Source of the DNA: Klebsormidium nitens
Lineage: Eukaryota; Plantae; Klebsormidiophyceae
Assembly: GCA_000708835.1 (NCBI GenBank)
Contig: DF236999.1
Location: 186,001 to 250,000, forward strand
DNA length: 64,000 nt
Direction: 5' to 3'
The notes beneath the pieces are model-generated. The model was not told the DNA's origin. It searched no databases and saw only the letters and a list, made by a program, of their open reading frames with translations. Below, piece by piece: positions 3,001 through 24,700 of this stretch. How positions within the stretch are numbered: the stretch's first letter is position 1; the number at the start of each line of letters is the position of its first letter. The position numbers and the translations under genes are program-made.

Positions 3001-3808
3001 CAACTGAGCCCGTCTCTTTGACAGTAGCACGATCTGCTCATTCAAACCCTTCCAATCCCCAGCTTCAAAACACGCTTCAAGGATTCCCGCAACGACCTTC
3101 TTCGTCCCTGTGATGTCCGCAGCCTGCACAGATTGCAAGAAGGTAACAAACCTTTTCATTATTTCAACCGCTCGAATCTGGTACTTAGCAAGCACACTTC
3201 TGCACGATGGAATCGTGCAATTATCAAAGTAAGGGTGGTCCTTTGAGAGGGAATGAAACTACTAGAATATAGAAAAGGACAAGGTGCAAGCCAAGGAGCG
3301 CGCGCATGTGCCCAGGATATGAGCAACAAGCAGGCCAAGGTTTTGTGGTTGGACCCTCACCAAACGCATCTGCTTTTCAATGTTGAGGAGGCTCTCCACA
3401 GCATCGGAAAGCTTATTGTGCTGCAAGACAAGAGAGCACAGATGAGTGCAAGCTCAGCCCTAAAGTAAACAGGTCCTAACAACAGAATATGAGGGCAGTT
3501 GGAATTCAAACTGCAGGGAAGAATTGCAATATCGAATGCAACCACGGTCCTACCACTGATCCACAATTCTGACTCGCATGACAATTTCAGCGACCGCTCG
3601 CAACTCTGCTCATGTCCATAAAGCAGCGCCTTTGAACATGTGGTTGATCCAGGTTTGGAAGGCTTTTGAAATATGGCGGCACAAACTTTCAGCCAGCAAT
3701 TACCTTCAAAGCCTGCGTCTTGTGCGTCTGAATGTTCTCGTCCAGCTCGTCATAGTTGATGGCCTTGGCCTTTCCTGATCCCTCCTTTTTTGAAGCATCG
3801 TCCTCCAT
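91..3808 (-). CDS. RPN5: 26S proteasome non-ATPase regulatory subunit 12 (lid subunit RPN5/PSMD12); 3' end lies beyond the window start
   Basis: Eleven GT-AG exons stay in phase: 3808-3704, 3420-3361, 3123-2995, 2784-2677, 2500-2396, 1991-1935, 1705-1506, 1259-1160, 1009-897, 559-406, 168-91. The spliced product has RPN5 signatures: [65 protein letters not shown], and the PCI-domain stretch [28 protein letters not shown]. Confidence 0.95.
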
Positions 3809-4749
3809 CTTGTCCGCTTTTCAGGTGCTTAGGCTCTCGACAACCTAATCCTGCAATTCAAACAGGATCAAGCCGTGGCGCAGGAGGGTGGCAGCCTGCA
3901 GCAGTCCTAGTGGCGCTCCTATACGCCTCTCCGTTGCAACCAACACAGACAATTTGAATGGGCCTTGGCCGCCAAGTTGGCGCAAACTTGTGGCTTCCAC
4001 TCCAGCTTACGAGCTAGCGGAGCGGGGATTTTTCCTGAGTCCCAGCAAAGGTCTGCCCTTTCCTTCCTAAACTAAGCTCGACGACCGTTCGATGATAGAG
4101 ATTTTGAACGGCTTAAAGTGCATGGAATTTGGGCTCTGCGGTGGGCCTGAGTGACCGAATATGTCCGTCACCATTCTAGTTACTCCCTTCCCTGAAGTTG
4201 GAGTTGCAGGGGGGGTGTCGCGATCCCGGAAATCTAGCAAAGAAGGCGCGCAACCGGAGTGCCTCAAATATACAATGATTGGTCTAATTTCCAAAGGAGA
4301 GATGTTTGACACTGGACTTCGTTCGAGGTTTCATTGTGGACTGGCTTTAGTAATAGTGATACCTGCGAAGGGTTGATCGGGGGTAAAATTTGTGCGCCGG
4401 TATATCCTCGTATATCTTGCGTATCAAAACAGAACCGATAGCAATAAACGGGTAACTTCACGTCCGGACATCTAGGCTTTTCTGCATTCTAAACCCTCGA
4501 TCAGAAAGCTGGTAAGCATCTGACCGCCACAATACCTTCGTCTTAGGAACTCTCTGTCCATGGATGAAGCTTGTAATCCATTTTGTCTCATATGATGGGG
4601 GAATAAGGATTGAGAGGCCGCGCTTTTGTCGTTTAGCAATTTTATACCGTTGAAATTTTGTCTCTTCCTTGTTCATATAGGTACCAATGGATATGAACGG
4701 TACCCACCGAGGTAGCTATGGTAGCCCATGGTCTCCGCCAATTAACAAG

Positions 4750-5004
4750 TACCGGTAGGTAGGTACCTGACTTGAAGGACGGTAATGTAGGTAGGTTTGA
4801 GTCAAACTTGCCATCGGGTTCCAATCTTCTCGAGCATGATTCCTAGACTTTAATGCCGTTCGATGCATGCCTCTCGATTGATCGGACGGTTCACAATTAG
4901 GAATTCAGAATTCTGCTCCGAGCAATTTATAAACCCAATGGCAAACTTGGTCACTGTTCAAAGAGCAGTACCATTTCAGGGTACGGCACGGCTACCTACC
5001 GGTA
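4750..5004. repeat. 13-bp perfect inverted repeat inside a GGTAC/TACC-rich patch of the divergent RPN5/EamA spacer
   Basis: TACCGGTAGGTAG at 4750-4762 is the exact reverse complement of CTACCTACCGGTA at 4992-5004. Confidence 0.55.
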
Positions 5005-5479
5005 CGGTATACCATATACTGGCCTACCGGGCTCACTCTGAGTCTTGTGGAAGGTGGGCTAGCGACTCGCGAGACTCGAGTCACCATCATCTGATTCGTC
5101 ATGGCCTGACTCGCGCGCAATGGTGCAAAATATCTCCTGTTCCAACTTCAATGCCTTCTGCAAAACCTGGCAAAAGCCTAAAGGGGAAGCAAAAGGAGCG
5201 CACTTTTGCTATCAGTGTCACGCAGATCTTGAGAAGGCAAGACCCAGAGACAAGATCTGCGTGTGTTGTAGTACGCCTCCTAGACAGTTTTGCCTTGGAC
5301 GGCTGTAGAACGCAAGGTTAGTTTCATCACTAGAGAGTCTAGTTTTCAGAGCGGCGTTTGCTCAAAGTAAGCACTTGTTCTCTTTTAAGCTGAAGGGCCG
5401 TGCTATTAAAACCAGGGGGACAGTTGAACTACGGTATAATAAAACATCCTGATGGTGACAGGACATACCTCTGTTTGCC

Positions 5480-8400
5480 ATGGTTCAACAAAGTGCTGCA
5501 GTGCTGGGCAACCGCAAGTGTCAAAGTCTTAGTTACTCCAGACCCAATAGGCGGCCTTTCCTGAGCCAAAGATCAACCGCATGTGTCGCTCTGGTCTCAA
5601 AGGAAACGCTTGGATGGTTTAGACATCCACGACATGGGCTCAGGCAAGCACTGAGCAGGGGAGAACCAATACTGTGTCAAAGAAGGCAGTCTGAGGCGTC
5701 AAGTCCCAGGTTGAATAAGAACCGGTACACTGGAAAAGCCTCTGAGCGGAGAGGGAATCTTTTGAAAGAAGAAAAGGCCCCTTATTCTGTGCCAGACGCC
5801 ATTAGAAAGCAGTTCAGAAGCAATCATCGCTTGCAGGCAGTTGGTTCAGACTCTCCTAGGCGGAGTGGGCCAGATAAGCAGCGGCTAGGGGGTGTCGGCA
5901 AGTCTGGTGGACGAAAGGGATGGGCCAGCGGTTTCAGGGGTCTCACCAAGTTGGAGGAGAGGGAGGTTTCTCTTGTGGATCGGTCGGGCCCTGAGGAGAG
6001 CAGGGAGAACACACAGGGAGGGAAGGACGCCGGGGGTTTGTCAGATTGGCTTGTGCAGTTGCTGAGTGGGCAGGAGAGATCAGAGAAGTGGGATCAGGCA
6101 AAGCATGCAAGTGACGCAGAAGGGGACGGTTCAACTCGCCGGCCCGGCCGGTTTGCTAGTCTTCTGAACTCTTTCCAGGCCAAGGTTGGCTCTCAGGGGG
6201 GGCAGGGAGGAGAGAGCGATGCGCAAGCAAGGGAAAAGGATGCGGAAGATGATGGGCCTGCTCCTACAGCTTTCTCATCATGGACAAGTCTGGACGAACC
6301 CTGGGCTAGCATTGTCCTTTTGAATCTGCTAGCGGCTCTGTATGGGTCCAATGCTGTCGCCGCAAAGTTTGTCGAAGAGGCCGCCGTGGTGCCCCCTGCA
6401 AGGTAAGGGGTGTGCCATCAATCTTACATTGCACCCTTCAGGTTGATAGATTTCGATCCTACTGCCCTTATAGCATTCTGGGGTAGGTTGCTGGGTTTGT
6501 TTGGTTCACTGGCAATATAAGCATCTTACATCTCTTTCGTCTCATGTCGGGTTCTGAAGCCCAATATCAATCTTGCCCAAGGGTTTCATGTGGTACACGA
6601 TGCAGCTCTTCTAGTTTGAAGGGGCTTCTGTCATGTTTCAGAAGTCTGCTCATGGGCTCAGCTTCTCTGCTGTGATACTCTCTTGGGGTGCGACAAGCTT
6701 CTTTTGCATGCACAGCTTTTTTATGGTTTTATGATCCTAGGAACCAAGCATGTCCCAATCTACTTTTCTGCAGCCTTGCCTGCGCCGTCAAGTTCAGCTT
6801 TGCTGCCCTGGCCTTCTCCCCTGTTCTCTGGAGCGTTCTCACGTCGGAGAAGTCTAAGGACAAGAAGACGGTCTTGGCGGGGATTGAGCTTGGGATGTGG
6901 CTGATGGCCGGGATTGTGAGCCAGACGGTTGGCATGAAGACTGGCAGCAGCAGCATTAGCCTGCTGTTTACGTTCACCATCATCCTGGTGCCCCTCCTCG
7001 AGGTGTCAATCGGAAGGCGCTCCATCAGCCAGTACACATGGCTCGCCTCCCTTGCCGCCCTCACAGGTGCGTTCCTTGTTTGATGGTGTCCCCTTCAGGA
7101 GCTTGTATCTGCATTGGCGCGCTTGTAAACCGTTGCTACCCAGTAGGAGGGATTGTACTGTTTGTTGTGCTCTCTTGTTTGCTGTCTGGATAGGTCTGTT
7201 GTACTTCTATCCTCACGTTGATTCGTTTGGTTATGTTCTTTCAGACCAATCACTTTCTTCAAAAAGAGACAGCTTTATTTGATCCACGGTGTCTTCCAAC
7301 TTTTCTGTCTCCTCCCCACTTCCTCACACCTTTTTGTCCTCCTCCACCTCCCCAGGCATGGGCCTGCTCAAGGACCACGGCGGCCTCACCCTTGACCTGG
7401 TTGCCCCCCCTGTGGAGGACCTGTGGGGCCTGTTCAGCTCCGCCATGTTCGCCATCCAGATTTTTCGGGCCGAGATGCTCTGCCAGAAGTTTGACCCGCT
7501 GCGCCTAGTTGCCACCCTCCTGGGAGTGTTGGCCGTCCTGTCGATTGGTTGGGAGGGGTGGTCCCTGGTGCATGGAGGCAATGGGATTGAGCCCCTGGAG
7601 CGTCAGCTGAGGGGACTGCCTGTGTGGCCTCTCATGTATGGCGGTTTGGTTGCTGGAGGTGAGTGACAGCCTCGATGTGCGGTGCCTACAATTGCTTTGT
7701 TGGGAAGATGAAAGGGGAAGGGTCCCCCTCAGGTGGAAACAGAAACATTGAGCATCTTTTGTGGTGATGTTTTTGCGATGCATCGGAATAATGTGACACC
7801 CTTCTGGTTTAGGAGCGAAGTCATCTCTGGTTTAGGCTGCGTCGCTTTAACACACCACATGCCTGCTGAAAAAGAAGCCTTTTTGAGGGACTGCCCTTTC
7901 AAGCTGTTGCTGGTTGTATAAATGTGGAACGAAGCTACAATCGCTGGACAGGTGAAGGCGGTTGGAATTGATCATCACTGCCGTGTATCTCAGTTGCCCT
8001 TCTCTTGCTGTCCAGGTTTGGGGGGTCTTCTGGAGTTGACGGGCCTGCAGAACATACACGCTTCTACGGCCACCCTGATCTACACCACTATTCCCATCTG
8101 GGGCGGCTTCTTCTCCTTCCTGGTCCGGGGGGAGAGCATCGGCGAGCCGGCCACCCTAGTGGGGGGCAGCCTCATGTTCGCCTGCAGTCTTGTTGCTGGG
8201 GTGCTTCAACCGAAGAAGGAGCAGGAGCCCCCCCCAGAAACAGAGGCCAAGAAAAAGGAGAAGCAAGCGGCACTGAAGGAGGAGAAGAAGGAGGAGGTTC
8301 AGCAGAACGTGATCATGGCTGCGGTGCGGGACTTGGTGCGCGGAAAGAGCGGAGACGTCGGGGAGCAAGTAGAGGAAAAGAAGGGGCGGAAGGTGCTGGG

Positions 8401-11400
8401 CCTGAAGCCCCACCAAGAGGCGCTGGCGCTGAAGCGCCAGGTGGCGCTGAGCAAGGAACTAAAGGGGGAGAGCAAAGGCATGGTGGGGAGAGCGATGGGG
8501 GCTTTGGCCGCTTTCCGGAGAGAGGAGCCTGAACCTGAGCCTGAACCTGAGCCTGAAACCCTGATGGAAAAGGCGATTGATGCGCTGACGGCACCGTTCC
8601 ACAAGGAAGAAGAGACTGTCTGCCCGCCAGAGGAGAAGATTGAACGGTCCAGTTCGCTTGGGAAAGCTGCGGCGCGGTTAGGGGAGGCGATCATGGCCTC
8701 TGGCGAAAACTTCTTCGAGGGTGCGGGGGAGGAGAAAGCAAAGAAAGCGGACGAGTCGGGTGCGGAGACGGACGATGAAGGAGAGGAGCCGTCCGTTAAC
8801 TCAGACACGCTCCCAGCTGCTTATCTCACGACGCAACTCAAGATGCCGTTTTACGCAACTCAGGCACAGGGCATGATGGCGGGGGCGAGCGGGGTGGGGG
8901 CGACAGCTGGCGCGGGCGCTTCGGGTGCTGCTGCGGGGTCTGCAGCAGCGGGGGGCGCAGCGGCAACCACTGCCGCGGGGGGGGCTGGAGCAGCTGCGGC
9001 AGGGGCAGCAGCAACGGGTGGCGCTGCCGCAGGCACGGCTGCTGCCGGTACGTTGTTGTCCTTTGCTGGTTCTAAACAAAACTTGACATCATGCTGAAAG
9101 AAGCTGGGTGGTTCTGAACCATGGGTAGAAGCCTGTGAAAACAGTGGGTTTTCGGTTTTCGCTTGTGAAGCTGGACACAACGTACCAACTAGTTCAGAGC
9201 TGATGCACGGCTACTGCAGTTCTCAGTTAAACTTGCTCGATCTGGGCGGACGGGACCTAATCAAGCTTGAATGTGAGGCCTTGACACAATTTCTGGTGAT
9301 TACGTTTTTGCGAAGATGCTTCTAGGCCAGTCCAGTTTGTCCCGCACAAACAAGTCCTGCAGCTAAACACCTCTTTACTTGCAGGAGCTGGTGCAGCAGC
9401 CGGCACGAGCACCGCCGCGTCAGCCGGCGCAGCCCTCACGGCTGCCGCCGCCCCTGCCACGACAAGCGCCCTTGCAGGGGCAGCGGCCTCTACTGGTGCT
9501 GCCGCGACGGGTGCAGCAGCTACGGGGGCTACTGCCGCAGCCACAGGGGCTGCCGCAACTGGTGCGGTGGGTGCAGCGGCATCTGGCGTGACGGCAGCAG
9601 CAACCGGGGCAGCGGCAACGGGAGGAGCAATAGCAACAGGGGGGGCAGCCGCGACTGGCGCAGCAACAGCAGGGGCGGCGGCAGCAACTGGGGCGGTAGC
9701 CACTGGAGCTGCTGCAACGGGTGCAGCTGTGACGGGGGCGGCGGCAACTGGCGGAGCATTTGTAGGGGCTGCCGCTACTGGGGGAGCAACAGGGGCGGCT
9801 GTGGGTGGGGCAGCCGCGACTGGAGCTCTGGCGGCTACAGGGGCGGCGGGGACAGGGGTCGCGGCTGCTGGGGCGGGCGCAGCTGTGGCGGGGAGCACAG
9901 CAGCGGGGGCCCTCACAGGGGCTGCTGCAAGTGCGGGTAAGTAGTGTTGGCGTTTTGGGGCAATCTATTAGTTTGTTGAATGTTGCATTGTCTGATGTGT
10001 TCGTACGAATCTATTTCGGTCCAACGAGTACTCCTAATGAGAATGCTCCTAGAGCGTTTTTGCACTTTCTCAAGGATCCTGATGTTCCAGGCCCCATATT
10101 CGGTCGTAGGACCTCCAACTTACTGAATCGTCCAGAACGTTCTGCTGCGATCTCAAATAGATAGCACCTGCCAGACTACCGAACCAACCCCTTCTCAATT
10201 TCTGCAGGCGGTGCTCTGACAACGGCTGCAACTAGCGCAGCCACGGCAGCCACTGGGGCCGCAGTCACGGGCAGCGCCACGACCGCTGCTGCCGCCGGGG
10301 CCGCAGGCGCTTTCGTGGGGGCTGCCGCAGGCACCGCCGCCACGGGAGCGACCGCCACAACCGTAGCTACAACGGGAGCAGCTGCAGCAGCCGCAGGGGC
10401 GATTGGAACGGCGGCTGCTGTCGCCGGGGGGGGGAGCCATCAGTGGAGCAACTGGAGGGGCTGCCGCGGCTGGGGGTGCGGCAGTGGGCGCCGCGTGCGG
10501 GGTCGTGCCGAGCGCAGCAACGGCAGTTGCTACGGGGGCTGCGACAACGGCGGCTGCCGGGGGGGGTGCTGCTGCTGCGGGGGGTGCGGCAGCCGGGGGG
10601 CTTTTGTCGATATCGGTGGTGGCTAACGAGGCCGTGAATGTGATTGTGGGGGGGATTGCGAGCCCATCGGGGGCAGGCGCGGTGATTACCGAGGTAGCCA
10701 AGGCGGCAGGAAAGACAATTGCGCAGGCGGCATCGCCAGTTTCGGGGGCGGGGGCGAATCTGTTGGCAGACGTGGCGGGCCTGGCGGCGGACACGCCATT
10801 GGCGGCGTTTGTAAGTGAGGTGGCGGCCACTACGCAGGCAGCGGCAGGTGAGCGACCCACAAAAGTGGACAGGATCTGCAATGGCAACGCGGATCCACCT
10901 TTGTCATTCAGTTACGCTTTCAATGCGACGAAAAGGGACCATGTTTGTCTTTGAAGGAACGTGTGAATAGAACTCTGCTTACCTCGCTTGCCCTGAAGTG
11001 TCAGAAGGCAAAGCACGAATATGGAACTTGTTGGTTCGAGTCGAGAGTAAGGGACTTTCTAATTATGCAAGCCCCAAGCTTATCAAAACGTTCACAAACA
11101 GCCAAGGAACTGCCTTTGAAACGTCGCTTCACAGTGCTTCATGATGCCTGCACTGAACACGTCTACAATCTCATGCCAAGTACGAAGTACTTACTTCTCT
11201 TCGGTCCTTCCCTCCAGGTTTCGTCGCTGGCGCAGGCACCGAAGCCGGAGTGGCGATCGAAACCGCCGCCCAAGCCGGGTCGGCCGCAGTCAATGCTGCC
11301 GTCACCAGCGTCGAAGCCATCGAGGCTCTAGCGGCATCACAGATCACAGAAGCTGCCACGGCCGTGGCCCAGAGCGCGGCCGTCGCGCAGTCCGCCAGCG

Positions 11401-12314
11401 AGGTGACGTCAGCCGCCGGGATGCTGAGCGCCGTCATAGAAAACGCGGCCGCAGTCGAAGCTGCTTCCGGGGCGGCCTCCGAACTGGTGGTCGGGGCAGA
11501 CCCCCTAGCGCAGGGCCTCTCGGCCGCTGTACAGTCGGCAGGCACTGTCCTGGAAAAGGCTGTGGAACTCTCGGGCCCTGTTTCGAGCCAGGCGGTGAGC
11601 GCCTCGGAGCCCCTTGTAAATAATGTCCCAGCGGCAGTCCAAGCAGTGGTCGCCGCCATAGAAAAGGCGGCTGAGACGGCACTCCCCGTGGCCTCCGAGT
11701 CGGCCGCAGGTTCGGCCGCTAGCGCCGCGGGGGATCCCCTTGCGTCAGCCATTGCGTCAGGTGCCGCTGACATCGGAGCTGCCACGTCGGAGGCGTGGGT
11801 CTCGGCCGCGCAGGCCGTGGGGTCGGCTATCGAGGGCGCATTGCCCGCCTCTCAAGGTGCTGAGGTGGCAGCCTCCGCTGCGAGTGGCTCGTCAGTGGTG
11901 GATCCCCTGGCGAGTGAGATGGTCAGTAAAGGGGCGGAGTTTGCGGCGGCCGTGACGCATGCGGCCGGGCCGGCGGTCCAAGCTGCGGTGCACGCCGCCA
12001 CAACGGCGGCAGCTGTCGCGGGAGCCAGTGGAGCGGTGACAGCTGTCACTCACGCGGCGTCCGATATTTTGGCGAATGCGGGGGACCAGTTCACGTGGCT
12101 GGACAGCTCGCAGTCTGGGCTGGGGGATGCGGTCCCTGAGGAAGGGCACCGAGCAGCGGCGACGGTGCTGGGGATGATGGGACCGCTAAACATGCATGCG
12201 CTAGAGCAACTGTATCATGTAGGCCCGCCATTGATAGGTGGCGGACTGGCGCTCTGCTGGCTGCTGCAGGCTACGGTGTCGAGGCAGAGGAGTCCGGGGA
12301 AGGTGCCAAGGTAG
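5480..12314 (+). CDS. EamA/DMT-family transporter with a transit-peptide-like N-terminus, fused to a charged linker and a very long Ala/Gly/Thr-rich C-terminal region (~1612 aa if one extra G is removed)
   Basis: Exons 5480-6402, 6774-7066, 7356-7658, 8016-9047, 9385-9936, 10208-10847, 11218-12314, all GT-AG and phase-consistent except one extra base in the G9 run at 10426-10434. DMT-like helices: LLNLLAALYGSNAVAAK, AGIELGMWLMAG..SQTVG, LLFTFTIILVPLLE, DLWGLFSSAMFAIQIFR, LELTGLQNIHASTATLIYTTIPIWGGFFSFLVRGE. Confidence 0.8.
8525..8557 (+). repeat. Coding 12-bp tandem repeat encoding (Glu-Pro)n
   Basis: GAGCCTGAACCT x2.75 translates to EPEPEPEPEPE in exon 4 of the EamA gene. Confidence 0.85.
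8872..10847 (+). repeat. Low-complexity coding region of ~450 aa built from GAAATG/AATG/GAAA-type motifs, spread over three exons
   Basis: Translation includes GVTAAATGAAATGGAIATGGAAATGAATAGAAAATGAVATGAAATG. Codons are synonymously varied GCN/GGN/ACN, which fits protein-level constraint rather than a DNA microsatellite. Confidence 0.9.
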
Positions 12315-13058
12315 CCAGGGGGTTAGATAGACCATTCTTTGTACGAGTAGGCAAATAAACCGTTCATCTGAGTTGCCGCTAACCGTTGAGCACCCATTCT
12401 TTGCGTGTTTGAAGCCCGATTGATCCATAAACTGTACCAAATGCAAGTGGCCATAGTTTGCAGGTACGTGAAAAAACATACGTCGTGTGTATAATCTGGT
12501 GAGATAGAGGAGCAGGTCACATGGCCTGACTAAAGTTTTGGGAGTCCTGCGTTGAAAGAAAGAGAATCAGGAATAAGCTATAACCAAGACCTTGTTTCTT
12601 TGTTGTAACATGCAAAGGCTGTAGGAAGGTGGGTGGTTCCAAGTATAATCTGCAGTGGTCGGGGACTTAAGCTGTTGATCCTTTGGCTGCTGATATAATC
12701 GACTCAACCTGGTTTCTAGTTCCATCTCTGTCAACCTCCCTAGCTCAGTCCAGTTTGCCTCCATCACTGTATGTATGCGTGTGCACATGGTGGGAACACC
12801 TATACGTCATGTTTTTGCATGGTGTATACATTACTTGGCTGCGCGGTAACGCTGGGCTTATACATGCTGTCTTTGCGCACCATCGATCATTAGTGTATAT
12901 ATAAGTTGCAACATGTCGATCTTGAAGGCTGGCATGCGCTATAGCTGTATATTCAATTTAACTCGTAGTGCAGTATTTGCATTGCCACCATCATGATCCC
13001 TGAGCTATAGCGGCCGCGCCGCGCTGCTTGTTGTATTCCGATATTAGTCCACAAGCTT

Positions 13059-14178: not shown

Positions 14179-17100
14179 TCAGAGCGGCAAAATAGCACGC
14201 GGCGTCCCACGCCCCCTCGAGTACGTCCGTCGTCTCCACCAGAGCCACACCGAGCTCCGCCTAAGTACAAGAGAAGCAAACACGAGCCCAAACACCACGA
14301 TCGGTAGAATCTCATACCACGTTTGCCCGAAGGCGCTATACATCCCTCGGCTATCCTCGAGCTCTTCGAGGCTCCCTCGCTTCTTTATCTGTTCTGCTAG
14401 CCCCTTGATCGAGCCAGCGGAATGCTCTTCCCAAGGCAGGTCATCCCGCCTTATTCCGTGCATGCTCCCGTCAACGCTAACATTGACTTGCCCCAGTGCC
14501 GAGCTCGTGTTTCGGACGAGCCACCTGTCGTCCGTGTAAGGCGCCGGCAGCTTGTCTAGAGTTAGCGACAAATCCGAAAGGACGGTGATGAACGCGGACG
14601 TCCAGTTGCTCACAACTTCCTGCAGTTTAGCACGGAAAGGCTCTGGTTGGTGGTAAATCCAAGTGCTTACGTACTGCTTTGCACCTGAGCAAAGCACCTA
14701 AGATTGGACGGCGGGGCCTCAGCTTGACCATCTACTTATGGCTGTGAGTGCAAAAGTCTAAAGATAGACTAACAACAAGGCTGCAAGCTTATGACGGGAG
14801 AAGCGAAAGACCGGACCCATCATCTGTTCCGGCCTGCATTCTCGCCCGTCCCTAAGTCCCACCAGGGCTGCAGAAAATGTCGTAATCAAGACGCCCCCCT
14901 CGTTGCATTCACTTTCAGCGCAATAACTCCGCGCTTCTAGGTCCCATCCATGTCATCTGAGTCCAATATGGACCGCCGTCCCACTATTCTCTATAGACTC
15001 ACTTCGAACACCGCTCTGCTGACGGGGTTGAACATGCGGAAGCAGTCGTCGTTGTTAGCCTTCTCATCGCCGTAGATCTCCCACGTGAACGGCAGCGGGA
15101 TGTGGAGCACGTCGAACATGTAGTCGGTTGCGGTGCCGTGCGCCAGATACCTGGGCCGAAACTTACGTCATGGGGTGCCTTCTCATTACACTCACAGGTC
15201 GTTTCGTTCAACTGAACATTACGTGGGGTGTTTACGTGAACGTTATGCGGAGAAGCTTTCGGGGCTTGGTTTGGCACTTCATCACTTCAGCTCACACAGT
15301 TGGCTCCTCGGTTACAGAGCTGTCAGGCGAAAGTGCTTTTAATCCGTCTGGAGAAAGAACAACGCTATTCAGCCGATTGGAGGGATCACTCTATCTCCGA
15401 CCTTTGGATAACGAGACCGTAGGGCCTTCGAGGAATGCGTTTTGCGCCCGCAGTTTCGGGGCGCTTTCAGCGGAATGCTGAGCCTCACCCCACAGAGCCG
15501 CCCCCCGACCCGACAACGCACCGCCCGCCGCAGTGCAGGCGATTCACTTTCTGCAGCAGCTCCAGCATTGGGCCCGCCACGGTGTCGGGGGGAGTGGACG
15601 ACAAATGGTCGTACGGCAGAAACAGGGCCTGGACAAGGAGCGAACGCGCGGTGTACATGTGCGGTGATTCATGGTGGACTTCAAGTTCGCAATCTGGGGT
15701 TTTACTTCCGTGAGTGAGACTCTACCGACAATGAAAAGGTTGCGACGTGTGAAACTTTGTAAGAGAAAAGCGGCCTCAAAGACGACCGCAAACCCGCCTT
15801 CCAGTTGTGTGATTGGCAGCCAAGGGCCAAAGAAATCAATCTGTTGAGCAAGGACCCCGGTAGGAACGGAGCCGCAAGCTTGCATCCTCTTAAAGAATAT
15901 ACTTCCCAGAAACCGAGGCTTGCTTCCGGAGGGTGGCGGACAGGGTGGGAGCAACTTGCACGGGGTCTTCTAGCGTCGACCACGTACCCTTTGCCCCTAT
16001 TCTGGGAGAGAATGAATGGGCGCTTTATCGCTTTTGCACCACCGAGATGAGCCAGACGATCCAGCCACCATTTGATGGAAAGCACTGCATTACGTCCCGT
16101 TACTGGTAGCCGCAAAAACAGGAAGCACGTTCCCACCTCCATGCCCGAGTGGACGTTGACCCAGAGATGCGGCCGGAACCCGGCGGCCAGCTTTTGCAAG
16201 AGTTCCGCTTCCGGCTCGCTGAACGGGCCCGTTCCGGGGAACTCTTCCGCCGGATCGTAGTCCTGGACGGAACACACAACCCAGGGTAGCTCAGTAGTCA
16301 ATCAATCTGCTGCCTCCAGGGTTGTGAGTTCAGGGGTTCTGGAGGCACTAGATGTTTGCAAGTTGAGAAATGAGAGGGATGCTATTCAGAATGGCTCATC
16401 AGATGGCTATGCTTAATAAAGTGTGGTACCGGAGTACCTGGTCGCATCTGTGTGGACAGTAATGTCAGCGCAAGATAGACAATTATACCAGATGCAACCA
16501 CACCAACGAGGCGAGGGATGCCTCACCGGTTCTTTTACGCCCCAGTCGATGCTCCAATTTCTGTTGGGATCGACGCCCCTTCCTGGAGGGAATACATTCT
16601 TATTAATCCGTGCAGTCCGGTTGAAACCATCGAACGACTTCGCCTCCATTTTTGCAATATCAAAGTTGTTTCCTGACTCGATAGAAAGCGAATCTCCTGT
16701 TGATGGGGAATGTTATTGCCCGTTCAGAAGAGTAACTGACTACTGAATGTGCGAAGACATCAAGTGAAGGCGCAAACGATTTGCCCGAAGTCAAAATGTG
16801 AATCGACAAACTTGTTCACGCCTCGAGATTGTCGACGAGTCAACTTTAAGAATGTCCATCCAATAAAACCCAAGTACTACACATCGAAAGACCTCACACT
16901 CAGTCCTTTATGGCAGCTCACCGTTTTTCCGTTCGCAAAGCTCGCCAGCCTCCACCTTCCTTTTGCCGTTGATATTCTCTGCAGGAACGATCTGCGAGGC
17001 AAGCGCCAGCGTTGCGGCAAACGAACTACTCCGAGACCCTATCCAGGGGATTAAGTACACGACCAACACATGTCGCTTCTAAATAGAAACGCGAACAGGC

Positions 17101-21725: not shown

Positions 21726-24700
21726 CTACCACTTTCTAGGCGTGTCCAGCGTGAAGTCGGTGTCGTGGTTGAGAGATCCCCTCAGGATGCTGATCTGCCC
21801 CTCGCGCTCCATGACATCCTCCTCTAGTTGCGCCGCCCTGTTCCGCAGCACTGCTGTTTCCCTCTCCTGTCGCTGCGCCTCCTCCCGCGCCGCATCCACC
21901 TGCTTGCGACACGTGTCCAGCTCATCGACCATGGTCCGCACTTCCTCCTTCAGAACTTTAACCTTCTCGACCAGCTCGCTAACCCGCCGGTCACGCTCCA
22001 CTAACCGCTCCTTGAACTCAGCCAACTGCGAGAGGGCGCTCGCTTCCGCGCACTCGACCTCATTCAAAGCCCCCCGCGCCTCCTCCAAATCCGCCCCCTG
22101 ACTCTGCAGCATCTCCCGTAACCCTTCTTTTTCCTTCGTAACCCTCGCTAACTCCCTCCTAACCTCCGCCAACCGCTCCTCGCTTTCCGCAACCGCCTCC
22201 CCCACGCGCGCCTCCTGACGCCGCACCTCCGCCTCGGTCGCCGTCAGCTTTTTCGCCAGCGCCTCATAGCGTATGCCCTGGGCACGTGCCTCCTCCTGCA
22301 GCCCCGCGATCTGCGCCTCCAACCCCTCGACAATCCCGTGCGCGCCTGCGTCCCGCGTTTGTAGTTGCCGGATGCGCTTCTGCAGGCTTTCCACCTCGCG
22401 CTCCTTGCCCTGTCCGAACGCCAACAGCTCCTCGTTGATCGCCACCAGTTCCTTTACCTGAAAGCAGCACGTGACGTGCGCACCAAGTGGGGCTTTTTGC
22501 TCACGTGGCGGTTCAAAAGATAAGAAGAACCGTTCCTGCCGTTTCTCAATGAAGTGCGTGATTGTCTGATCTCGTCTGCACTCCAGCCGGGCGGTCCGAA
22601 AACCTAGTCTGGCTTCTGACTATGCCCACTCAGATGCTCACTTGCAAACGATTGTATACTCTGTCGAACGTCACCTCCCCCTGAATGGAGAGTCCCTCCG
22701 ACGGCATTCTTAAGCATGTCAGGATGGGGGGAAAAAACTCCGGCAAGGCGCTCCTCTCAGCTTCTTGTAGCAAGCATAAATTGGATGCCTACTCGTGCAT
22801 CGACTAACTACGAGAAATCAGCCCTTCATAGCCATGGACTTCCTGGTCAAGGAACCTGCACCTTGGATTTGCGAACTCGCGAACTCCAATTTGGGCAGAA
22901 AAGGAGTGAGAGGCTTAAAAGAGCGACTCGCAAGAACCAGCAATCTATCTCAACAGTCAGCCTACGGCACCGGAATCTGCGGCGTCTCGCACGCACGTGT
23001 CCTTCACAATTGTATCTTTTCCCCGGCCGGACAACCCACAGCAACCAGTCTGTCACACAGGAAATAAAACGGCACGACAAACAATCAGACGCAGCCGTTA
23101 CTTCCGAGAGCAATCCCCACCTGCGCTTTGTGGTCTCCCAGAGCGCGCCGCAGCTCCGCGCGCTCTCTCTCCGCGCCCGCGTCGCTCGCGTCCCTGGCCT
23201 GCCACGTGTCCCGCGCGGCCTGCAGCTCGTCGCCCAGCGCCTTGAGCGCGCGCTCGCGCTCCGCCAGCGTCGCCTGCAGCGCGTCCGCGCGGCCGCGTGC
23301 CGCCGACGCCTCCTCCAGGCTCGTGGAGAGGCCCCGCTGAAGGTCCGCGATCGCCTGAAGAAATATGTTCGGTTCACGTTCTTAGGGTGTCCGCCTCTTC
23401 GATCGTTTGTGAGCGATCTTGACTATTTTCTGAGGGCGAACAGACGAACGGAAGGGCTAGCATGACGGATAAGTTCGTCGCAGTGGATAAGAAGCAGACC
23501 CTCAGAGCGCGTCGCAGTCCTTCCGTTTGTTCCATGAATAGCTTTCTCTTCGACAGTGTTTGTACGATGCCCCTCTGCTGCGTTTGCGTGAGCCTTACTA
23601 AGAGACTCACGCCCCGATACTTCTTCTAATCACTTTGACAGCTTTTTTCAGACAGACGCCCCTGATCCAAAAGACCAGAGCCAGCCTACTCATCTCCTGG
23701 CATCCTCACCTGCGCACTCTCTTCCGCTTTCCGCTCCGCCACCTCGATCCGCCGCGCCGCCTCCCTCGCCGCGCGCTCGTGCATCTGCGCCTGCTCGCGC
23801 ACCGCCCGTGCGTCCACCAGCGCCGCCGCATTCCGCTCGTCCGCCGAGACCTTCCGCTGGCGGAACCCAGCCGCCTCCGTTTCCGCCGACTCCGCCCGCT
23901 GCTTCAGCGCTTCCGCCCGCTTGTGAGCTTCTTCCAGCGCCCGCTCCTTCTCCTCGACAGACGCTTTCAGGGCTGTGACGTCAGAGCGGAATGTTTTCGC
24001 TTCCTGGGCGAGCTTGTCCGCGTCAGCACGGGCGGCGGACTCCTTGTCACGTGCCTCCTGGAGACTGGCCGCGAGACGCGCCTCCATCTCCTTGTACCTG
24101 CGGGGGTCCGCAAGAAAAGTAAGCGTCAGAAATAGGGAACTTGCGGAATTGCGAAGCTTCTTGCTGGCTATCTAGGATGCATGTTGCAACGAAATCCAGG
24201 ACGACAGGGCAAGCGTGCAAGAGGCGGTATTTGTTTTGGTCTCGAAGCGAACGGCGGAAACCCCAGAGCAAAAACTTTCCGAATTGGATGTAGTACCTCA
24301 CAATCGCTTTTGTGCTCGGCCATTTCAGCGTTGCAGTATTTGCAAGATTTCGGCGTGAAACTCGACGATCGAGGGTTCAATCCACGATGAGCCGGGACCT
24401 CAAGTCACGACTCCTGCCAGGTTCGACGATGCACCACATTCAGGTTGAGAAAATTATTTGATTACCCCATATGCGCCCGAGAACATCGGAGATGTCATCG
24501 CAGACTGAAGTTCGATATTCCACGAGGGCCGCTCTGCCCTCCAAAACCAGTGTCCAATCGTTCCTTCAAAATCCTCTTGCCCCCATGGAGTAACCTTGCT
24601 TACACATGGATGTCTCGTTCCTCAAGCGCAACGTGTAACTTCTAAACTCTGTTACAAATCCATGAGACTGCCTTTGCTCCTTTTCCCAACGTAAGTTACT

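What the first reader, a model, noticed from the sequence alone, without database searches (positions are those of the whole stretch)
5480..12314. EamA/DMT transporter fused to ~800 aa of silk/antifreeze-like Ala-Gly-Thr sequence
Seen: one continuous splice model joins a transit-like N-terminus, an EamA-type multi-TM core, a Glu/Lys-rich linker with (EP)n, ~450 aa of GAAATG/AATG repeats, and a ~365-aa Ala/Ser-rich region ending in a hydrophobic segment (PPLIGGGLALCWLLQ). Established: EamA/DMT proteins usually have a ~300-aa core without long tails; Ala-Ala-Thr and Gly-Ala repeats characterise antifreeze (glyco)proteins, elastin and silks. Inference: a plastid-targeted transporter carrying a structural, self-assembling or stress-protective appendage, possibly relevant to freezing or drying of an aeroterrestrial alga. 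I know of no described architecture like it. This is the best candidate for an undescribed system in this window.
Basis: partly seen in the sequence, partly recalled or inferred. Interest (0 to 1): 0.78.

Follow-up and report, generated by a model that had tools for sequence, protein, structure and literature searches.

The report
Algal EamA transporter with giant conserved tail
A streptophyte alga (probably Klebsormidium) expresses a membrane transporter with a roughly 1,040-residue alanine/glycine/threonine-rich tail; the tail is real, is kept by selection and is an enlarged version of a tail shared by uncharacterised relatives in other streptophyte algae and bryophytes, but nothing supports an antifreeze or silk role.

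Summary
The gene is real and lies at the stated coordinates: 7 exons, ATG 5480 to TAG 12312-12314.

- **Transcripts.** Contigs from 4 studies carry all six GT..AG joints.
- **Frame break.** The window sequence is not literally continuous. A run of 9 G at 10426-10434 breaks the frame in exon 6. Transcripts from 3 studies have 8 G, and the orthologous locus L001 is in frame. The corrected CDS is 4839 nt, or 1612 aa.
- **Core.** It is a divergent 10-TM EamA/DMT transporter.
- **Tail, about 1,040 aa.** It consists of a Glu/Lys linker, a 30-aa conserved motif, about 390 aa of A/G/T sequence with AAATG pentapeptide repeats, about 450 aa of acidic amphipathic-helix sequence, and a short hydrophobic end.
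- **Selection on the tail.** dN/dS against L001 is 0.00-0.14, against 0.33 for the N-terminal extension. One 75-aa A/G/T block is 100% identical although synonymous sites are saturated.
- **Not unique.** The fused layout is shared by a small streptophyte-only family: Mesotaenium, Spirogloea, liverworts, mosses and a second Klebsormidium paralogue. All have core + motif + a 214-747 aa Ala/Ser-rich amphipathic tail. All are annotated only as hypothetical or EamA domain proteins.
The antifreeze, silk and elastin comparisons fail their defining features.
- **Function.** The tail's role is unknown. My best guess is a spacer plus a helical docking or tethering domain.

The parts
5480..6402 (+). Exon 1. 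Start codon, a fast-evolving Ser/Arg/Gly-rich N-terminal extension of about 275 aa, then TM1.
   Evidence: ORF and hydropathy. The start MVQ is conserved in L001. Amino-acid identity to L001 is 36% and dN/dS 0.33 for the extension, against 95% and 0.04 for TM1. The joint 6402/6774 is present in 4 runs.
6774..7066 (+). Exon 2. TM2-TM4 and the start of TM5 of the EamA core.
   Evidence: Pfam EamA E 0.0019, below the cut-off because it is a fragment. 93% aa identity to L001, dN/dS 0.027. Hydrophobic peaks.
7356..7658 (+). Exon 3. TM5 end to TM8 start of the EamA core.
   Evidence: phmmer against 1.84 billion representatives finds only 21 relatives, all of this family. dN/dS 0.084.
8016..8209 (+). 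Exon 4, first part. TM8 end, TM9 and TM10, with the motif HASTATLIYTTIPIWG.
   Evidence: Pfam EamA E 1e-4. 92% identity to L001, dN/dS 0.037. Hydropathy.
8210..8788 (+). Exon 4, Glu/Lys-rich linker of about 190 aa, including (EP)5 at 8525-8557.
   Evidence: Composition. Tandem repeat. dN/dS 0.10 against L001 and 0.07 for L001/L003. The linker is much shorter in relatives.
8789..8878 (+). Conserved 30-aa family motif (..LPAAYLTTQLKMPFYATQAQ..).
   Evidence: This is the only part of the tail that aligns to 10 family members under composition-corrected BLASTP. Q-L-K-x-P-x-Y-A-x-Q is invariant in alignment A2.
8879..9047 (+). Exon 4 end. Start of the Ala/Gly/Thr-rich region, in the same exon as TM9-10.
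   Evidence: Translation. dN/dS 0.034 against L001 and 0 for L001/L003.
9385..9936 (+). Exon 5. 184 aa, 51% Ala, 21% Gly, 16% Thr. About 20-25 AAATG-type pentapeptide units, 12 of them perfect.
   Evidence: Gly/Thr autocorrelation peaks at lag 5. Hydropathy period about 5.4 residues, z 9. All 12 perfect units are encoded by different 15-mers, with third-position identity 0.27. Joints on both sides are present in 4 runs. dN/dS 0.07.
10208..10597 (+). Exon 6, A/G/T-rich part. The first 75 aa are identical in L001.
   Evidence: 75 of 75 aa identical at pS 0.67. 3 aa differences in 130 codons for L001/L003, dN/dS 0.05.
10426..10434 (+). Run of 9 G that breaks the reading frame in the assembly. Transcripts have 8 G.
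   Evidence: Frame 0 before and frame 1 after. One letter left out in contigs of X1, X5 and X9 (table 4). L001 and L003 are in frame..AVAGGGAITG...
10598..10847 (+). Exon 6 end. Start of the Ala/Val/Ser-rich amphipathic region.
   Evidence: Composition. dN/dS 0.085 for the whole of exon 6b (10439-10846) against L001. No aa change in 76 aligned codons of this end part for L001/L003. Joint 10847/11218 with 244-250 letters on each side.
11218..12224 (+). Exon 7, main part. Acidic Ala/Val/Ser/Glu-rich domain with helical amphipathic periodicity. Helix breaks lie at DPLA/GPV sites.
   Evidence: Hydrophobicity period 3.53 residues, z 13.7 against shuffles. AF2 predicts all helix but at pLDDT 41. Across exon 7, 31 D+E against 8 K+R. 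74% identity to L001, dN/dS 0.14.
12225..12278 (+). C-terminal moderately hydrophobic segment PPLIGGGLALCWLLQATV, followed by a basic end.
   Evidence: Maximum Kyte-Doolittle mean is 1.58 over 15 aa. Conserved in L001: APLLVGGLAFCWLLQ. A similar 'PPL' end in the Klebsormidium paralogue and in Spirogloea was seen by eye only.
12312..12314 (+). Stop codon TAG.
   Evidence: The orthologue stops at the equivalent place.

Best explanation
**Shown**
- This is one expressed 7-exon nuclear gene whose corrected product has 1612 aa.
- The core is a divergent 10-TM EamA/DMT (drug/metabolite-exporter type) transporter.
- It belongs to a small subfamily found only in streptophyte algae, bryophytes and one lycophyte.
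- Members of that subfamily share three features:
  - a long, poorly conserved N-terminal extension;
  - an invariant roughly 30-aa motif (..SQLKFPFYAAQA..) shortly after TM10;
  - a C-terminal Ala/Ser/Thr/Val-rich tail with alpha-helical amphipathic periodicity.
- The window gene groups with the long-tailed Mesotaenium paralogue, not with the short-tailed Klebsormidium paralogue.
- In the window's lineage two things were added between the core and the amphipathic domain:
  - a Glu/Lys linker between TM10 and the motif;
  - about 390 aa of Ala/Gly/Thr sequence after the motif, including AAATG pentapeptide repeats.
- The whole tail is translated and under purifying selection at the amino-acid level. 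The repeat is kept as protein, not by recent DNA slippage.

**Inferred, about one chance in three**
- The core moves a small, unknown solute by alternating access.
- With 10 TM helices, both termini lie on the same side of the membrane.
- The conserved motif is a juxtamembrane docking or regulatory element.
- The A/G/T region acts as a long spacer of constrained sequence.
- The acidic amphipathic helices, with the hydrophobic basic C-terminal end, form a distal head. This head binds a partner, self-associates, or touches a neighbouring membrane.
- On this reading the protein is a transporter carrying its own tether or scaffold, not a cryoprotectant.
For: **Gene model and expression**
- Six GT..AG joints are present in contigs of 4 runs from 4 studies, and introns are uncovered.
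- TM9-10, the linker, the motif and the first about 55 aa of A/G/T sequence lie in one uninterrupted exon.
- The 1-nt frame break is corrected by RNA contigs (table 4) and by the orthologues.

**Orthology**
- The syntenic loci L001 and L003 have the same exons and phases.

**Selection, window against L001 (dS 0.9-2.1)**
- dN/dS by region:

| Region | dN/dS |
|---|---|
| Core | 0.03-0.08 |
| Linker | 0.10 |
| A/G/T parts | 0.00-0.07 |
| Exon 6b | 0.085 |
| Exon 7 | 0.14 |
| N-extension | 0.33 |

**Selection, close pair L001 against L003**
- Tail dN/dS is 0-0.30.
- All coding indels are multiples of three: 3, 9, 12 and 30 nt.

**Repeat**
- The 12 perfect AAATG units are all encoded differently.

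**Family**
- Only 21 representatives at E<=1e-3 among 1.84 billion proteins.
- They are named.
- Shared layout and tail composition.
- Motif conservation.
- Relatives pass the Pfam EamA cut-off.
- A model of a relative's core matches DMT structures: 6i1r, 7paf, 5y78, 5i20.
- There is a weak match to the DME model TIGR00950.
- Per-exon identities and trees put the window gene with Mesotaenium ME000373S06351. Support is 86/80 for exon 2 and 99/97 for exon 3.

**Amphipathic helices**
- Period 3.53 residues, z 13.7, in exon 7.
- The top hydrophobicity peak lies at 3.5-3.8 residues in 9 of 10 relatives' tails, with z above 4 in 8 of them.
Against: - No single contig or read spans the core and the whole tail. 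Assemblies break at 8881-8996, 9835-10207 and 10526-10595. An additional internal transcript cannot be excluded.
- Contigs cannot show transcript ends.
- The functional part is pure inference.
  - AF2 gave pLDDT 41 for exon 7 and 36-44 for the motif region of a relative.
  - The homodimer test gave no verdict.
- The C-terminal segment is too short and too weakly hydrophobic for a confident TM helix.
- Localisation is unknown.
- Beyond the motif, the tails of distant members are alike only in composition and periodicity. The 'same tail' is therefore not proven homologous residue by residue.
- dS between the window and L001 is saturated, so those dN/dS values are approximate. The close pair has few substitutions.
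Confidence: 0.72

Rival explanations
1. One reading: the tail is a stress-protective or self-assembling material (antifreeze, silk or elastin-like) that helps an aeroterrestrial alga survive freezing or drying.
For: - The tail has extreme Ala/Gly/Thr content and a regular short repeat.
- Its sequence is strongly conserved.
- Its amphipathic helices have a period of 3.5-3.7 residues, which also occurs in LEA-type and apolipoprotein-like proteins (the comparison is from my own knowledge).
Against: - The repeat period is 5, not 3 (AFGP) or 11 (type I AFP).
- No silk or elastin units are present.
- Pfam finds no LEA, antifreeze or pentapeptide-repeat family, and there is no PDB relative.
- The tail is covalently tied to a polytopic membrane protein at a copy number set by a transporter. 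That is a poor design for a bulk protectant.
- The same kind of tail occurs in aquatic and semi-aquatic Zygnematophyceae and in bryophytes.
Confidence: 0.07
2. The tail is mainly a disordered regulatory region, for example autoinhibitory or controlled by modification, that gates the transporter. It has no structural or tethering role.
For: - AF2 confidence is low throughout the tail.
- A conserved juxtamembrane motif is typical of regulatory elements.
- Tail sequence turns over between distant lineages while composition is kept.
Against: - About 1,040 aa is far more than regulation needs.
- A 75-aa A/G/T block with zero amino-acid change at saturated synonymous divergence argues for defined structure or specific contacts.
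- So does the strong helical amphipathic signal.
- The A/G/T region has few of the charged residues usual in regulatory IDRs. It does contain much Thr and some Ser.
Confidence: 0.18
3. The fusion is an artefact: two adjacent genes or transcripts (transporter and repeat protein) wrongly joined. Alternatively, the tail is decaying, as the frame break in the genome suggests.
For: - The window's own letters contain a frame break at 10426-10434.
- No single contig spans everything.
- Contig word depth is lower over exons 5-6 (table 2), although the tool states that depth cannot rank parts of a gene.
Against: - Exon 4 alone joins TM9-10 to the linker, the motif and the start of the repeat.
- The joints 4/5, 5/6 and 6/7 are present in 4 studies.
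- RNA lacks the extra G.
- The orthologues keep the frame and the intron phases, and their indels are multiples of 3.
- dN/dS is far below 1.
- Relatives have core and tail in one annotated protein or one ORF.
Confidence: 0.04

Closest known systems
Uncharacterised streptophyte 'EamA domain-containing proteins': Mesotaenium ME000373S06351 (1278 aa), Marchantia Mp7g12590 (841 aa), Physcomitrium XP_024384989 (739 aa), Spirogloea SM000090S24300, and the K. nitens paralogue KFL_001770210 (713 aa)
   Same: - They share the layout: long N-extension, 10-TM EamA core, the invariant QLKxPxYAxQA motif after TM10, and an Ala/Ser/Thr/Val-rich tail with amphipathic helical periodicity.
- The window gene groups with the long-tailed Mesotaenium copy.
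   Different: - The window protein's tail is the longest: about 1,040 aa against 214-747 aa.
- It has a roughly 190-aa Glu/Lys linker and about 390 aa of A/G/T sequence with AAATG repeats, which none of the others show.
- It lacks the basic KLKLxALK helix that follows the motif in most members.
DMT superfamily, 10-TMS drug/metabolite exporter type (Pfam PF00892 EamA; YddG, PDB 5i20; TIGR00950)
   Same: - Ten hydrophobic helices.
- EamA hits in exons 2 and 4.
- Relatives pass the Pfam threshold.
- A relative's model superposes on DMT structures with TM-score 0.6-0.7.
   Different: - It is very divergent: only 21 relatives at E<=1e-3 for exon 3, and 25-30 bits against a 230-bit cut-off for TIGR00950.
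- The substrate cannot be inferred.
- Canonical members are about 300 aa and have no such extensions.
Antifreeze glycoproteins (Ala-Ala-Thr)n and type I Ala-rich antifreeze helices
   Same: High Ala and Thr content and short repeats.
   Different: - The repeat period is 5, with an obligatory Gly, not 3 or 11.
- The sequence is not secreted on its own. It is part of a polytopic membrane protein.
- There is no sequence or family match.
Silk fibroins and spidroins, elastin
   Same: Ala/Gly-rich low-complexity repeats.
   Different: - There are no GAGAGS, GGX or VPGVG units.
- The longest Ala run is 6, from direct reading.
- The repeat is not homogenised at the DNA level.
Organellar ion transporters with long soluble, charged extensions (e.g. 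plant KEA1/KEA2). This is an analogy from my own knowledge, not tested here.
   Same: A membrane transport core carries a several-hundred-residue Glu/Lys-rich or helical soluble arm thought to serve positioning or interaction rather than transport.
   Different: - The transporter fold is different.
- The extension there is N-terminal.
- There is no A/G/T repeat.

Membership tests
EamA/DMT superfamily (PF00892) | Significant match to the EamA profile in both halves of the protein | tested here: inconclusive
Tested exon by exon only. Exon 2 scores 18.9 bits and exon 4 scores 23.0 bits against a cut-off of 28.2. The fragments are too short. Relatives 40-56% identical in exon 3 pass with 28.8-63 bits.
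EamA/DMT superfamily (PF00892) | Ten transmembrane helices (5+5) and the DMT fold | tested here: met
   Ten hydrophobic segments lie across exons 1-4. AF2 of the Spirogloea relative gives 10 TM helices, and Foldseek hits CST, LicB, TPT, YddG and Vrg4 at E 1e-5 to 1e-3. The model's pLDDT is only 59.
Streptophyte EamA-with-tail subfamily (unnamed) | Conserved post-TM10 motif ..QLKxP(F/Y)YAxQA.. | tested here: met
   Window exon 4 aa 258-287 aligns to 10 members at E 2e-9 to 8e-4 with composition correction. The residues are invariant in A2.
Streptophyte EamA-with-tail subfamily (unnamed) | Core closest to family members in a whole-database search | tested here: met
   All named hits for exon 3 are this family. 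Trees place the window gene inside it, next to Mesotaenium ME000373S06351.
Streptophyte EamA-with-tail subfamily (unnamed) | Ala/Ser-rich C-terminal tail with helical amphipathic periodicity | tested here: met
   Composition. Period 3.53 residues, z 13.7, in the window. The top peak lies at 3.5-3.8 residues in 9 of 10 relatives, with z above 4 in 8 of them.
Antifreeze glycoprotein (AFGP) | Tandem Ala-Ala-Thr (or Pro-Ala-Thr) tripeptide repeat | tested here: not met
   Thr and Gly autocorrelation peaks at lag 5. It is negative at lag 3 in exon 5.
Type I antifreeze protein | Ala-rich helix with Thr every 11 residues | tested here: not met
   Thr autocorrelation at lag 11 is 0.07 in the window and 0.00 in L001, against 0.18-0.34 at lag 5.
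Pentapeptide-repeat proteins (PF00805) and LEA families | Match to the family profile | tested here: not met
   No Pfam family at E<=0.1 for exons 5, 6a, 6b and 7.
Tail-anchored or extra C-terminal TM helix | Hydrophobic stretch of about 18-22 residues with high mean hydropathy at the C-terminus | tested here: inconclusive
   The best 15-residue window has a Kyte-Doolittle mean of 1.58, contains three Gly, and is followed by a basic end. It is conserved in L001.
Plastid-targeted protein | Cleavable transit peptide or experimental localisation | not testable with these tools
   The first 60 aa have 11 Arg/Lys, 10 Ser/Thr and 1 acidic residue (direct reading). No predictor or proteome data were available.

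The most novel reading that the evidence does not exclude
The Ala/Gly/Thr region is not disordered filler. On this reading it is a new kind of folded, sequence-specific rod, for example a pentapeptide-based helix bundle or solenoid. One 75-aa block is unchanged across saturated synonymous divergence, and the AAATG units are kept purely at the protein level. The rod would hold the acidic helical head and the hydrophobic end at a fixed distance. The transporter would then bridge two organellar membranes or dock to a large assembly, making it a transporter with a built-in molecular ruler or tether. This arrangement would be ancestral to streptophytes and lost in seed plants.
Probability: 0.1. Interest if true: 0.8.

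Novelty: new variant of a known kind. Interest (0 to 1): 0.5.

Why it matters
- **An unstudied transporter subfamily.**
  - It defines an unstudied, streptophyte-specific branch of the DMT transporters with a conserved motif and a selected low-complexity tail.
  - It is present in model bryophytes (Marchantia, Physcomitrium), where it can be knocked out.
  - In this search it appears absent from seed plants.
- **A clean case of selection on low complexity.**
  - A roughly 390-aa Ala/Gly/Thr sequence is under purifying selection about as strong as that on the membrane core.
  - This runs against the usual assumption that such tracts drift.
- **Practical.** It flags a one-base homopolymer error in the assembly that would truncate or distort any automatic gene model here.
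- **Limit.** It does not, at present, reveal a new mechanism. The tail's function and the protein's location are unknown.

Tried and rejected
- **Word search with exon 7.** 8000 low-complexity candidates were scored and none was significant. Uninformative.
- **PDB sequence searches.** Exon 5, exon 7 and the family profile all gave nothing.
- **ESM Atlas look-alikes for exon 7.** No usable hit.
- **AF2 of exon 7 with a 2-sequence alignment.** pLDDT 41, so it was not used for fold search.
- **AF2 of the Spirogloea core plus motif.** The core is usable, but the motif region is at pLDDT 36-44. This gives no evidence that the motif docks on the core.
- **Homodimer test of the exon 7 domain.** No answer, which is neither support nor evidence against.
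- **Two metagenome scans, exon 7 alignment and exon 3.** No confirmed loci. Orthologous loci came from exact protein look-ups instead.
- **Earlier-findings look-ups by place and words near this gene.** Nothing.
- **Literature searches for Klebsormidium+EamA and for the relatives' gene ids.** Nothing relevant.
- **A misreading corrected.** I first took L002/P0002 for a distant orthologue. One search showed it matches the short-tailed K. nitens paralogue KFL_001770210, so it is a paralogue lineage.
- **Neutral slippage rejected.** The repeat is not neutral slippage product, and the fusion is not a two-gene artefact.
- **Joined protein not used.** Every search, scan, tree and rate estimate was done exon by exon by reference. 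The length of 1612 aa is arithmetic on exon lengths.

Full report
**1. What is in the sequence**

- On the + strand, an ORF starts at ATG 5480, the first ATG after an in-frame stop.
- It can be followed through seven exons: 5480-6402, 6774-7066, 7356-7658, 8016-9047, 9385-9936, 10208-10847 and 11218-12314 (TAG). All introns are GT..AG.
So are the (EP)n tract at 8525-8557, the read-through stop at 9095-9097 and the C-terminal PPLIGGGLALCWLLQ.
Read literally it stops at 10624-10626.

**2. Expression and the frame break**

- The look-up of sequencing runs found 20 runs from 8 studies that hold part or all of the stretch. 18 of them hold 56-78% of its sampled words, about the exonic share.
- I laid contigs of four runs from four studies on 6340-12335.
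  - All six joints are present in all four runs, with GT..AG ends.
  - Intron bins are empty apart from a few low-depth unspliced contigs. The runs therefore behave as RNA assemblies.
  - Contigs of X1, X5 and X9 leave out one letter at 10426. The X13 contig ends before the run.
- With 8 G, exon 6 is 639 nt, the phases fit, and the CDS is 4839 nt (1612 aa).
- The orthologous loci read ..AVAGGGAITG.. in frame.
- The break is therefore most likely a homopolymer error of the assembly.
- No single contig spans the mRNA, because assemblies break inside the repeat. However, exon 4 by itself already joins TM9-10, the linker, the conserved motif and the first about 55 residues of A/G/T sequence.

**3. 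Anatomy, exon by exon**

| Region | Content |
|---|---|
| Exon 1 | About 275-aa Ser/Arg/Gly-rich extension, nearly free of acidic residues at the start, then TM1 |
| Exons 2, 3 and start of exon 4 | TM2-TM10 |
| Exon 4, middle | About 190-aa Glu/Lys linker |
| Exon 4, after linker | 30-aa motif (..LPAAYLTTQLKMPFYATQAQ..) |
| End of exon 4, exon 5, first 130 aa of exon 6 | About 390 aa that are 75-90% Ala+Gly+Thr. Exon 5 is a pentapeptide AAATG array: lag-5 autocorrelation, hydropathy period about 5.4 residues, z 9 |
| End of exon 6 and exon 7 | About 450 aa, Ala/Val/Ser/Glu-rich and acidic (in exon 7, 31 D+E against 8 K+R). Very strong hydrophobic periodicity of 3.53 residues (z 13.7), meaning long amphipathic helices, broken at DPLA/GPV sites |
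| C-terminal end | Moderately hydrophobic, Gly-rich 18-mer followed by a basic end |

- Such A/G/T-rich open frames occur nowhere else in the window.

**4. Is the tail functional?**

- The locus L001 has the same exons and phases. It is a JGI metagenome contig, syntenic on both sides.
- Its introns are no longer alignable to the window, and dS is 0.9-2.1.
- dN/dS against L001:

| Region | dN/dS |
|---|---|
| TM core | 0.03-0.08 |
| Linker | 0.10 |
| First A/G/T piece | 0.03 |
| Exon 5 | 0.07 |
| First 75 aa of exon 6 | 0.00 (75/75 identical at pS 0.67) |
| Exon 6b | 0.085 |
| Exon 7 | 0.14 |
| N-terminal extension | 0.33 |

- A second, closer pair confirms this (L001 against L003, introns 7-16% different).
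  - Tail dN/dS is 0-0.30.
  - All coding indels are multiples of three, including 12 and 30 nt in the repeat.
- The twelve perfect AAATG units of exon 5 are encoded by twelve different 15-mers, with third-position identity of 0.27.
- The repeat is therefore old and maintained at the protein level. It was not produced by recent slippage.

**5. What family is it?**

- Pfam sees only weak EamA matches in the exon fragments.
- A full HMMER scan of 1.84 billion representatives with exon 3 found just 21 proteins at E<=1e-3.
- Those that carry names are the following:
  - Mesotaenium endlicherianum, two paralogues of 1278 and 919 aa;
  - Spirogloea muscicola;
  - Marchantia (Mp7g12590);
  - Riccia, Calypogeia, Physcomitrium, Sphagnum and Ceratodon;
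  - Selaginella, which is tail-less.
- A further hit is KFL_001770210 of Klebsormidium nitens (713 aa). It is a short-tailed paralogue, not this gene.
- No seed-plant or named chlorophyte protein appeared.
- All hits are annotated only as hypothetical or EamA domain-containing. No paper in the library mentions their identifiers.
- They pass the Pfam EamA cut-off and have no other domain.
- A model of the Spirogloea core has the DMT fold.
- The nearest NCBIfam model is the generic 10-TMS drug/metabolite exporter TIGR00950, far below its cut-off. The substrate is therefore open.

**6. The tail is a family trait that was enlarged here**

- The relatives share the whole layout:
  - an N-extension of 140-360 aa;
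  - the core;
  - the invariant QLKxPxYAxQA motif;
  - a tail of 214-747 aa rich in Ala, Ser, Thr, Val, Leu and Gly. Its top hydrophobicity peak lies at 3.5-3.8 residues in 9 of 10 members, with z above 4 in 8 of them.
- With composition correction, only the 30-aa motif aligns between lineages.
- Per-exon identities and trees put the window gene and L001 with the long-tailed Mesotaenium protein. They do not group with the Klebsormidium paralogue. Support is 86/80 for exon 2 and 99/97 for exon 3.
- A long-tailed lineage is therefore probably older than the split of these algal classes.
- The Glu/Lys linker and the AAATG array were seen only in the window, L001 and L003.

**7. How it probably works**

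- *Shown:* a DMT-type transporter with a translated, selected, roughly 1,040-aa tail.
- *Inferred:*
  - With ten TM helices, the N-extension and the tail face the same compartment.
  - The motif next to TM10 is a docking or regulatory element.
  - The A/G/T segment is a spacer whose exact sequence matters.
  - The acidic amphipathic helices, with the conserved hydrophobic and basic end, form a distal head. This head binds a partner, self-associates or touches a membrane.
- I give this tether or scaffold reading about one chance in three.
- A purely regulatory disordered tail gets about one in five.
- The antifreeze or silk idea gets well under one in ten:
  - the period is 5, not 3 or 11;
  - there are no silk or elastin units;
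  - there are no family or structure matches;
  - the tail type also occurs in bryophytes and Zygnematophyceae.
- Plastid targeting is plausible from the N-terminal composition but is untested.

**8. Limits and procedure**

- The joined protein was never built or searched. All work was done exon by exon by reference.
- Structure predictions of the tail were of low confidence, and the dimer test gave no answer.
- The organism name comes from other agents' notes. It fits the placement found here, but I did not verify it.

**9. Verdict**

- This is a real, expressed and conserved gene.
- It is an extreme member of an uncharacterised, streptophyte-specific EamA subfamily whose members all carry a C-terminal amphipathic Ala-rich tail.
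- The protective-material interpretation is not supported.
- The novelty lies in the size of the tail and in the strongly selected A/G/T repeat, not in the fusion as such.

Noticed in passing
window 10426-10434: The assembly has 9 G where transcripts of three studies have 8. Any gene model made from the genome alone will be truncated or given a false intron here. Another agent's note (s1-326924) reports a similar one-base frame break elsewhere in this genome.
   Followed up: yes
window 8280 and 11568: In runs X1, X9 and X13, a contig matches the gene from these places onward but carries at least 255 unrelated letters before them. Those letters are not in the window. They may be chimeric assemblies or other loci sharing a short low-complexity word. 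Unexplained.
   Followed up: partly
window 9077-9381, 10820-11244, 11007-11225: Low-depth contigs (3-11 against 30-200) cover introns 4 and 6. These are minor unspliced RNA or DNA carry-over.
   Followed up: no
L002 (Logan SRR23617307 contig), P0046: Klebsormidium has a second, short-tailed paralogue (KFL_001770210, 713 aa). It has the same motif, and its C-terminal end (..PPLSWIGH..WCHLL..) resembles the window protein's end by eye. L002 is its counterpart in a related alga.
   Followed up: partly
P0026/P0018/P0027 (ENA contigs, organism unknown): Another family member has an Ala/Thr-rich insert inside the loop between TM7 and TM8, plus a roughly 660-aa Ser/Ala/Gly/Pro/Thr tail. Low-complexity growth therefore recurs in this family.
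   Followed up: no
P0008 (Mesotaenium ME000072S09377), P0019: A sister subfamily has a KASTATL motif, no QLKFPFY motif and short basic tails. It served as the outgroup in the trees.
   Followed up: no
L001 1518-7693 vs window 3808-5480: Synteny holds on both sides: a PSMD12/CSN4-like gene upstream, and conserved exons at window 14194-16588 downstream. L001 has about 4.5 kb of extra DNA upstream of the gene, with a reverse-transcriptase ORF at 5365-5691.
   Followed up: partly
window 21726-24087, minus strand: Long Glu/Ala/Arg-rich ORFs typical of a coiled-coil protein. Not examined.
   Followed up: no
P0004 (Mesotaenium long paralogue), tail: Its tail contains a strongly hydrophobic stretch (..LPVVLALLLVLQAATAAS..). 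This could be an extra membrane segment or a gene-model artefact.
   Followed up: no
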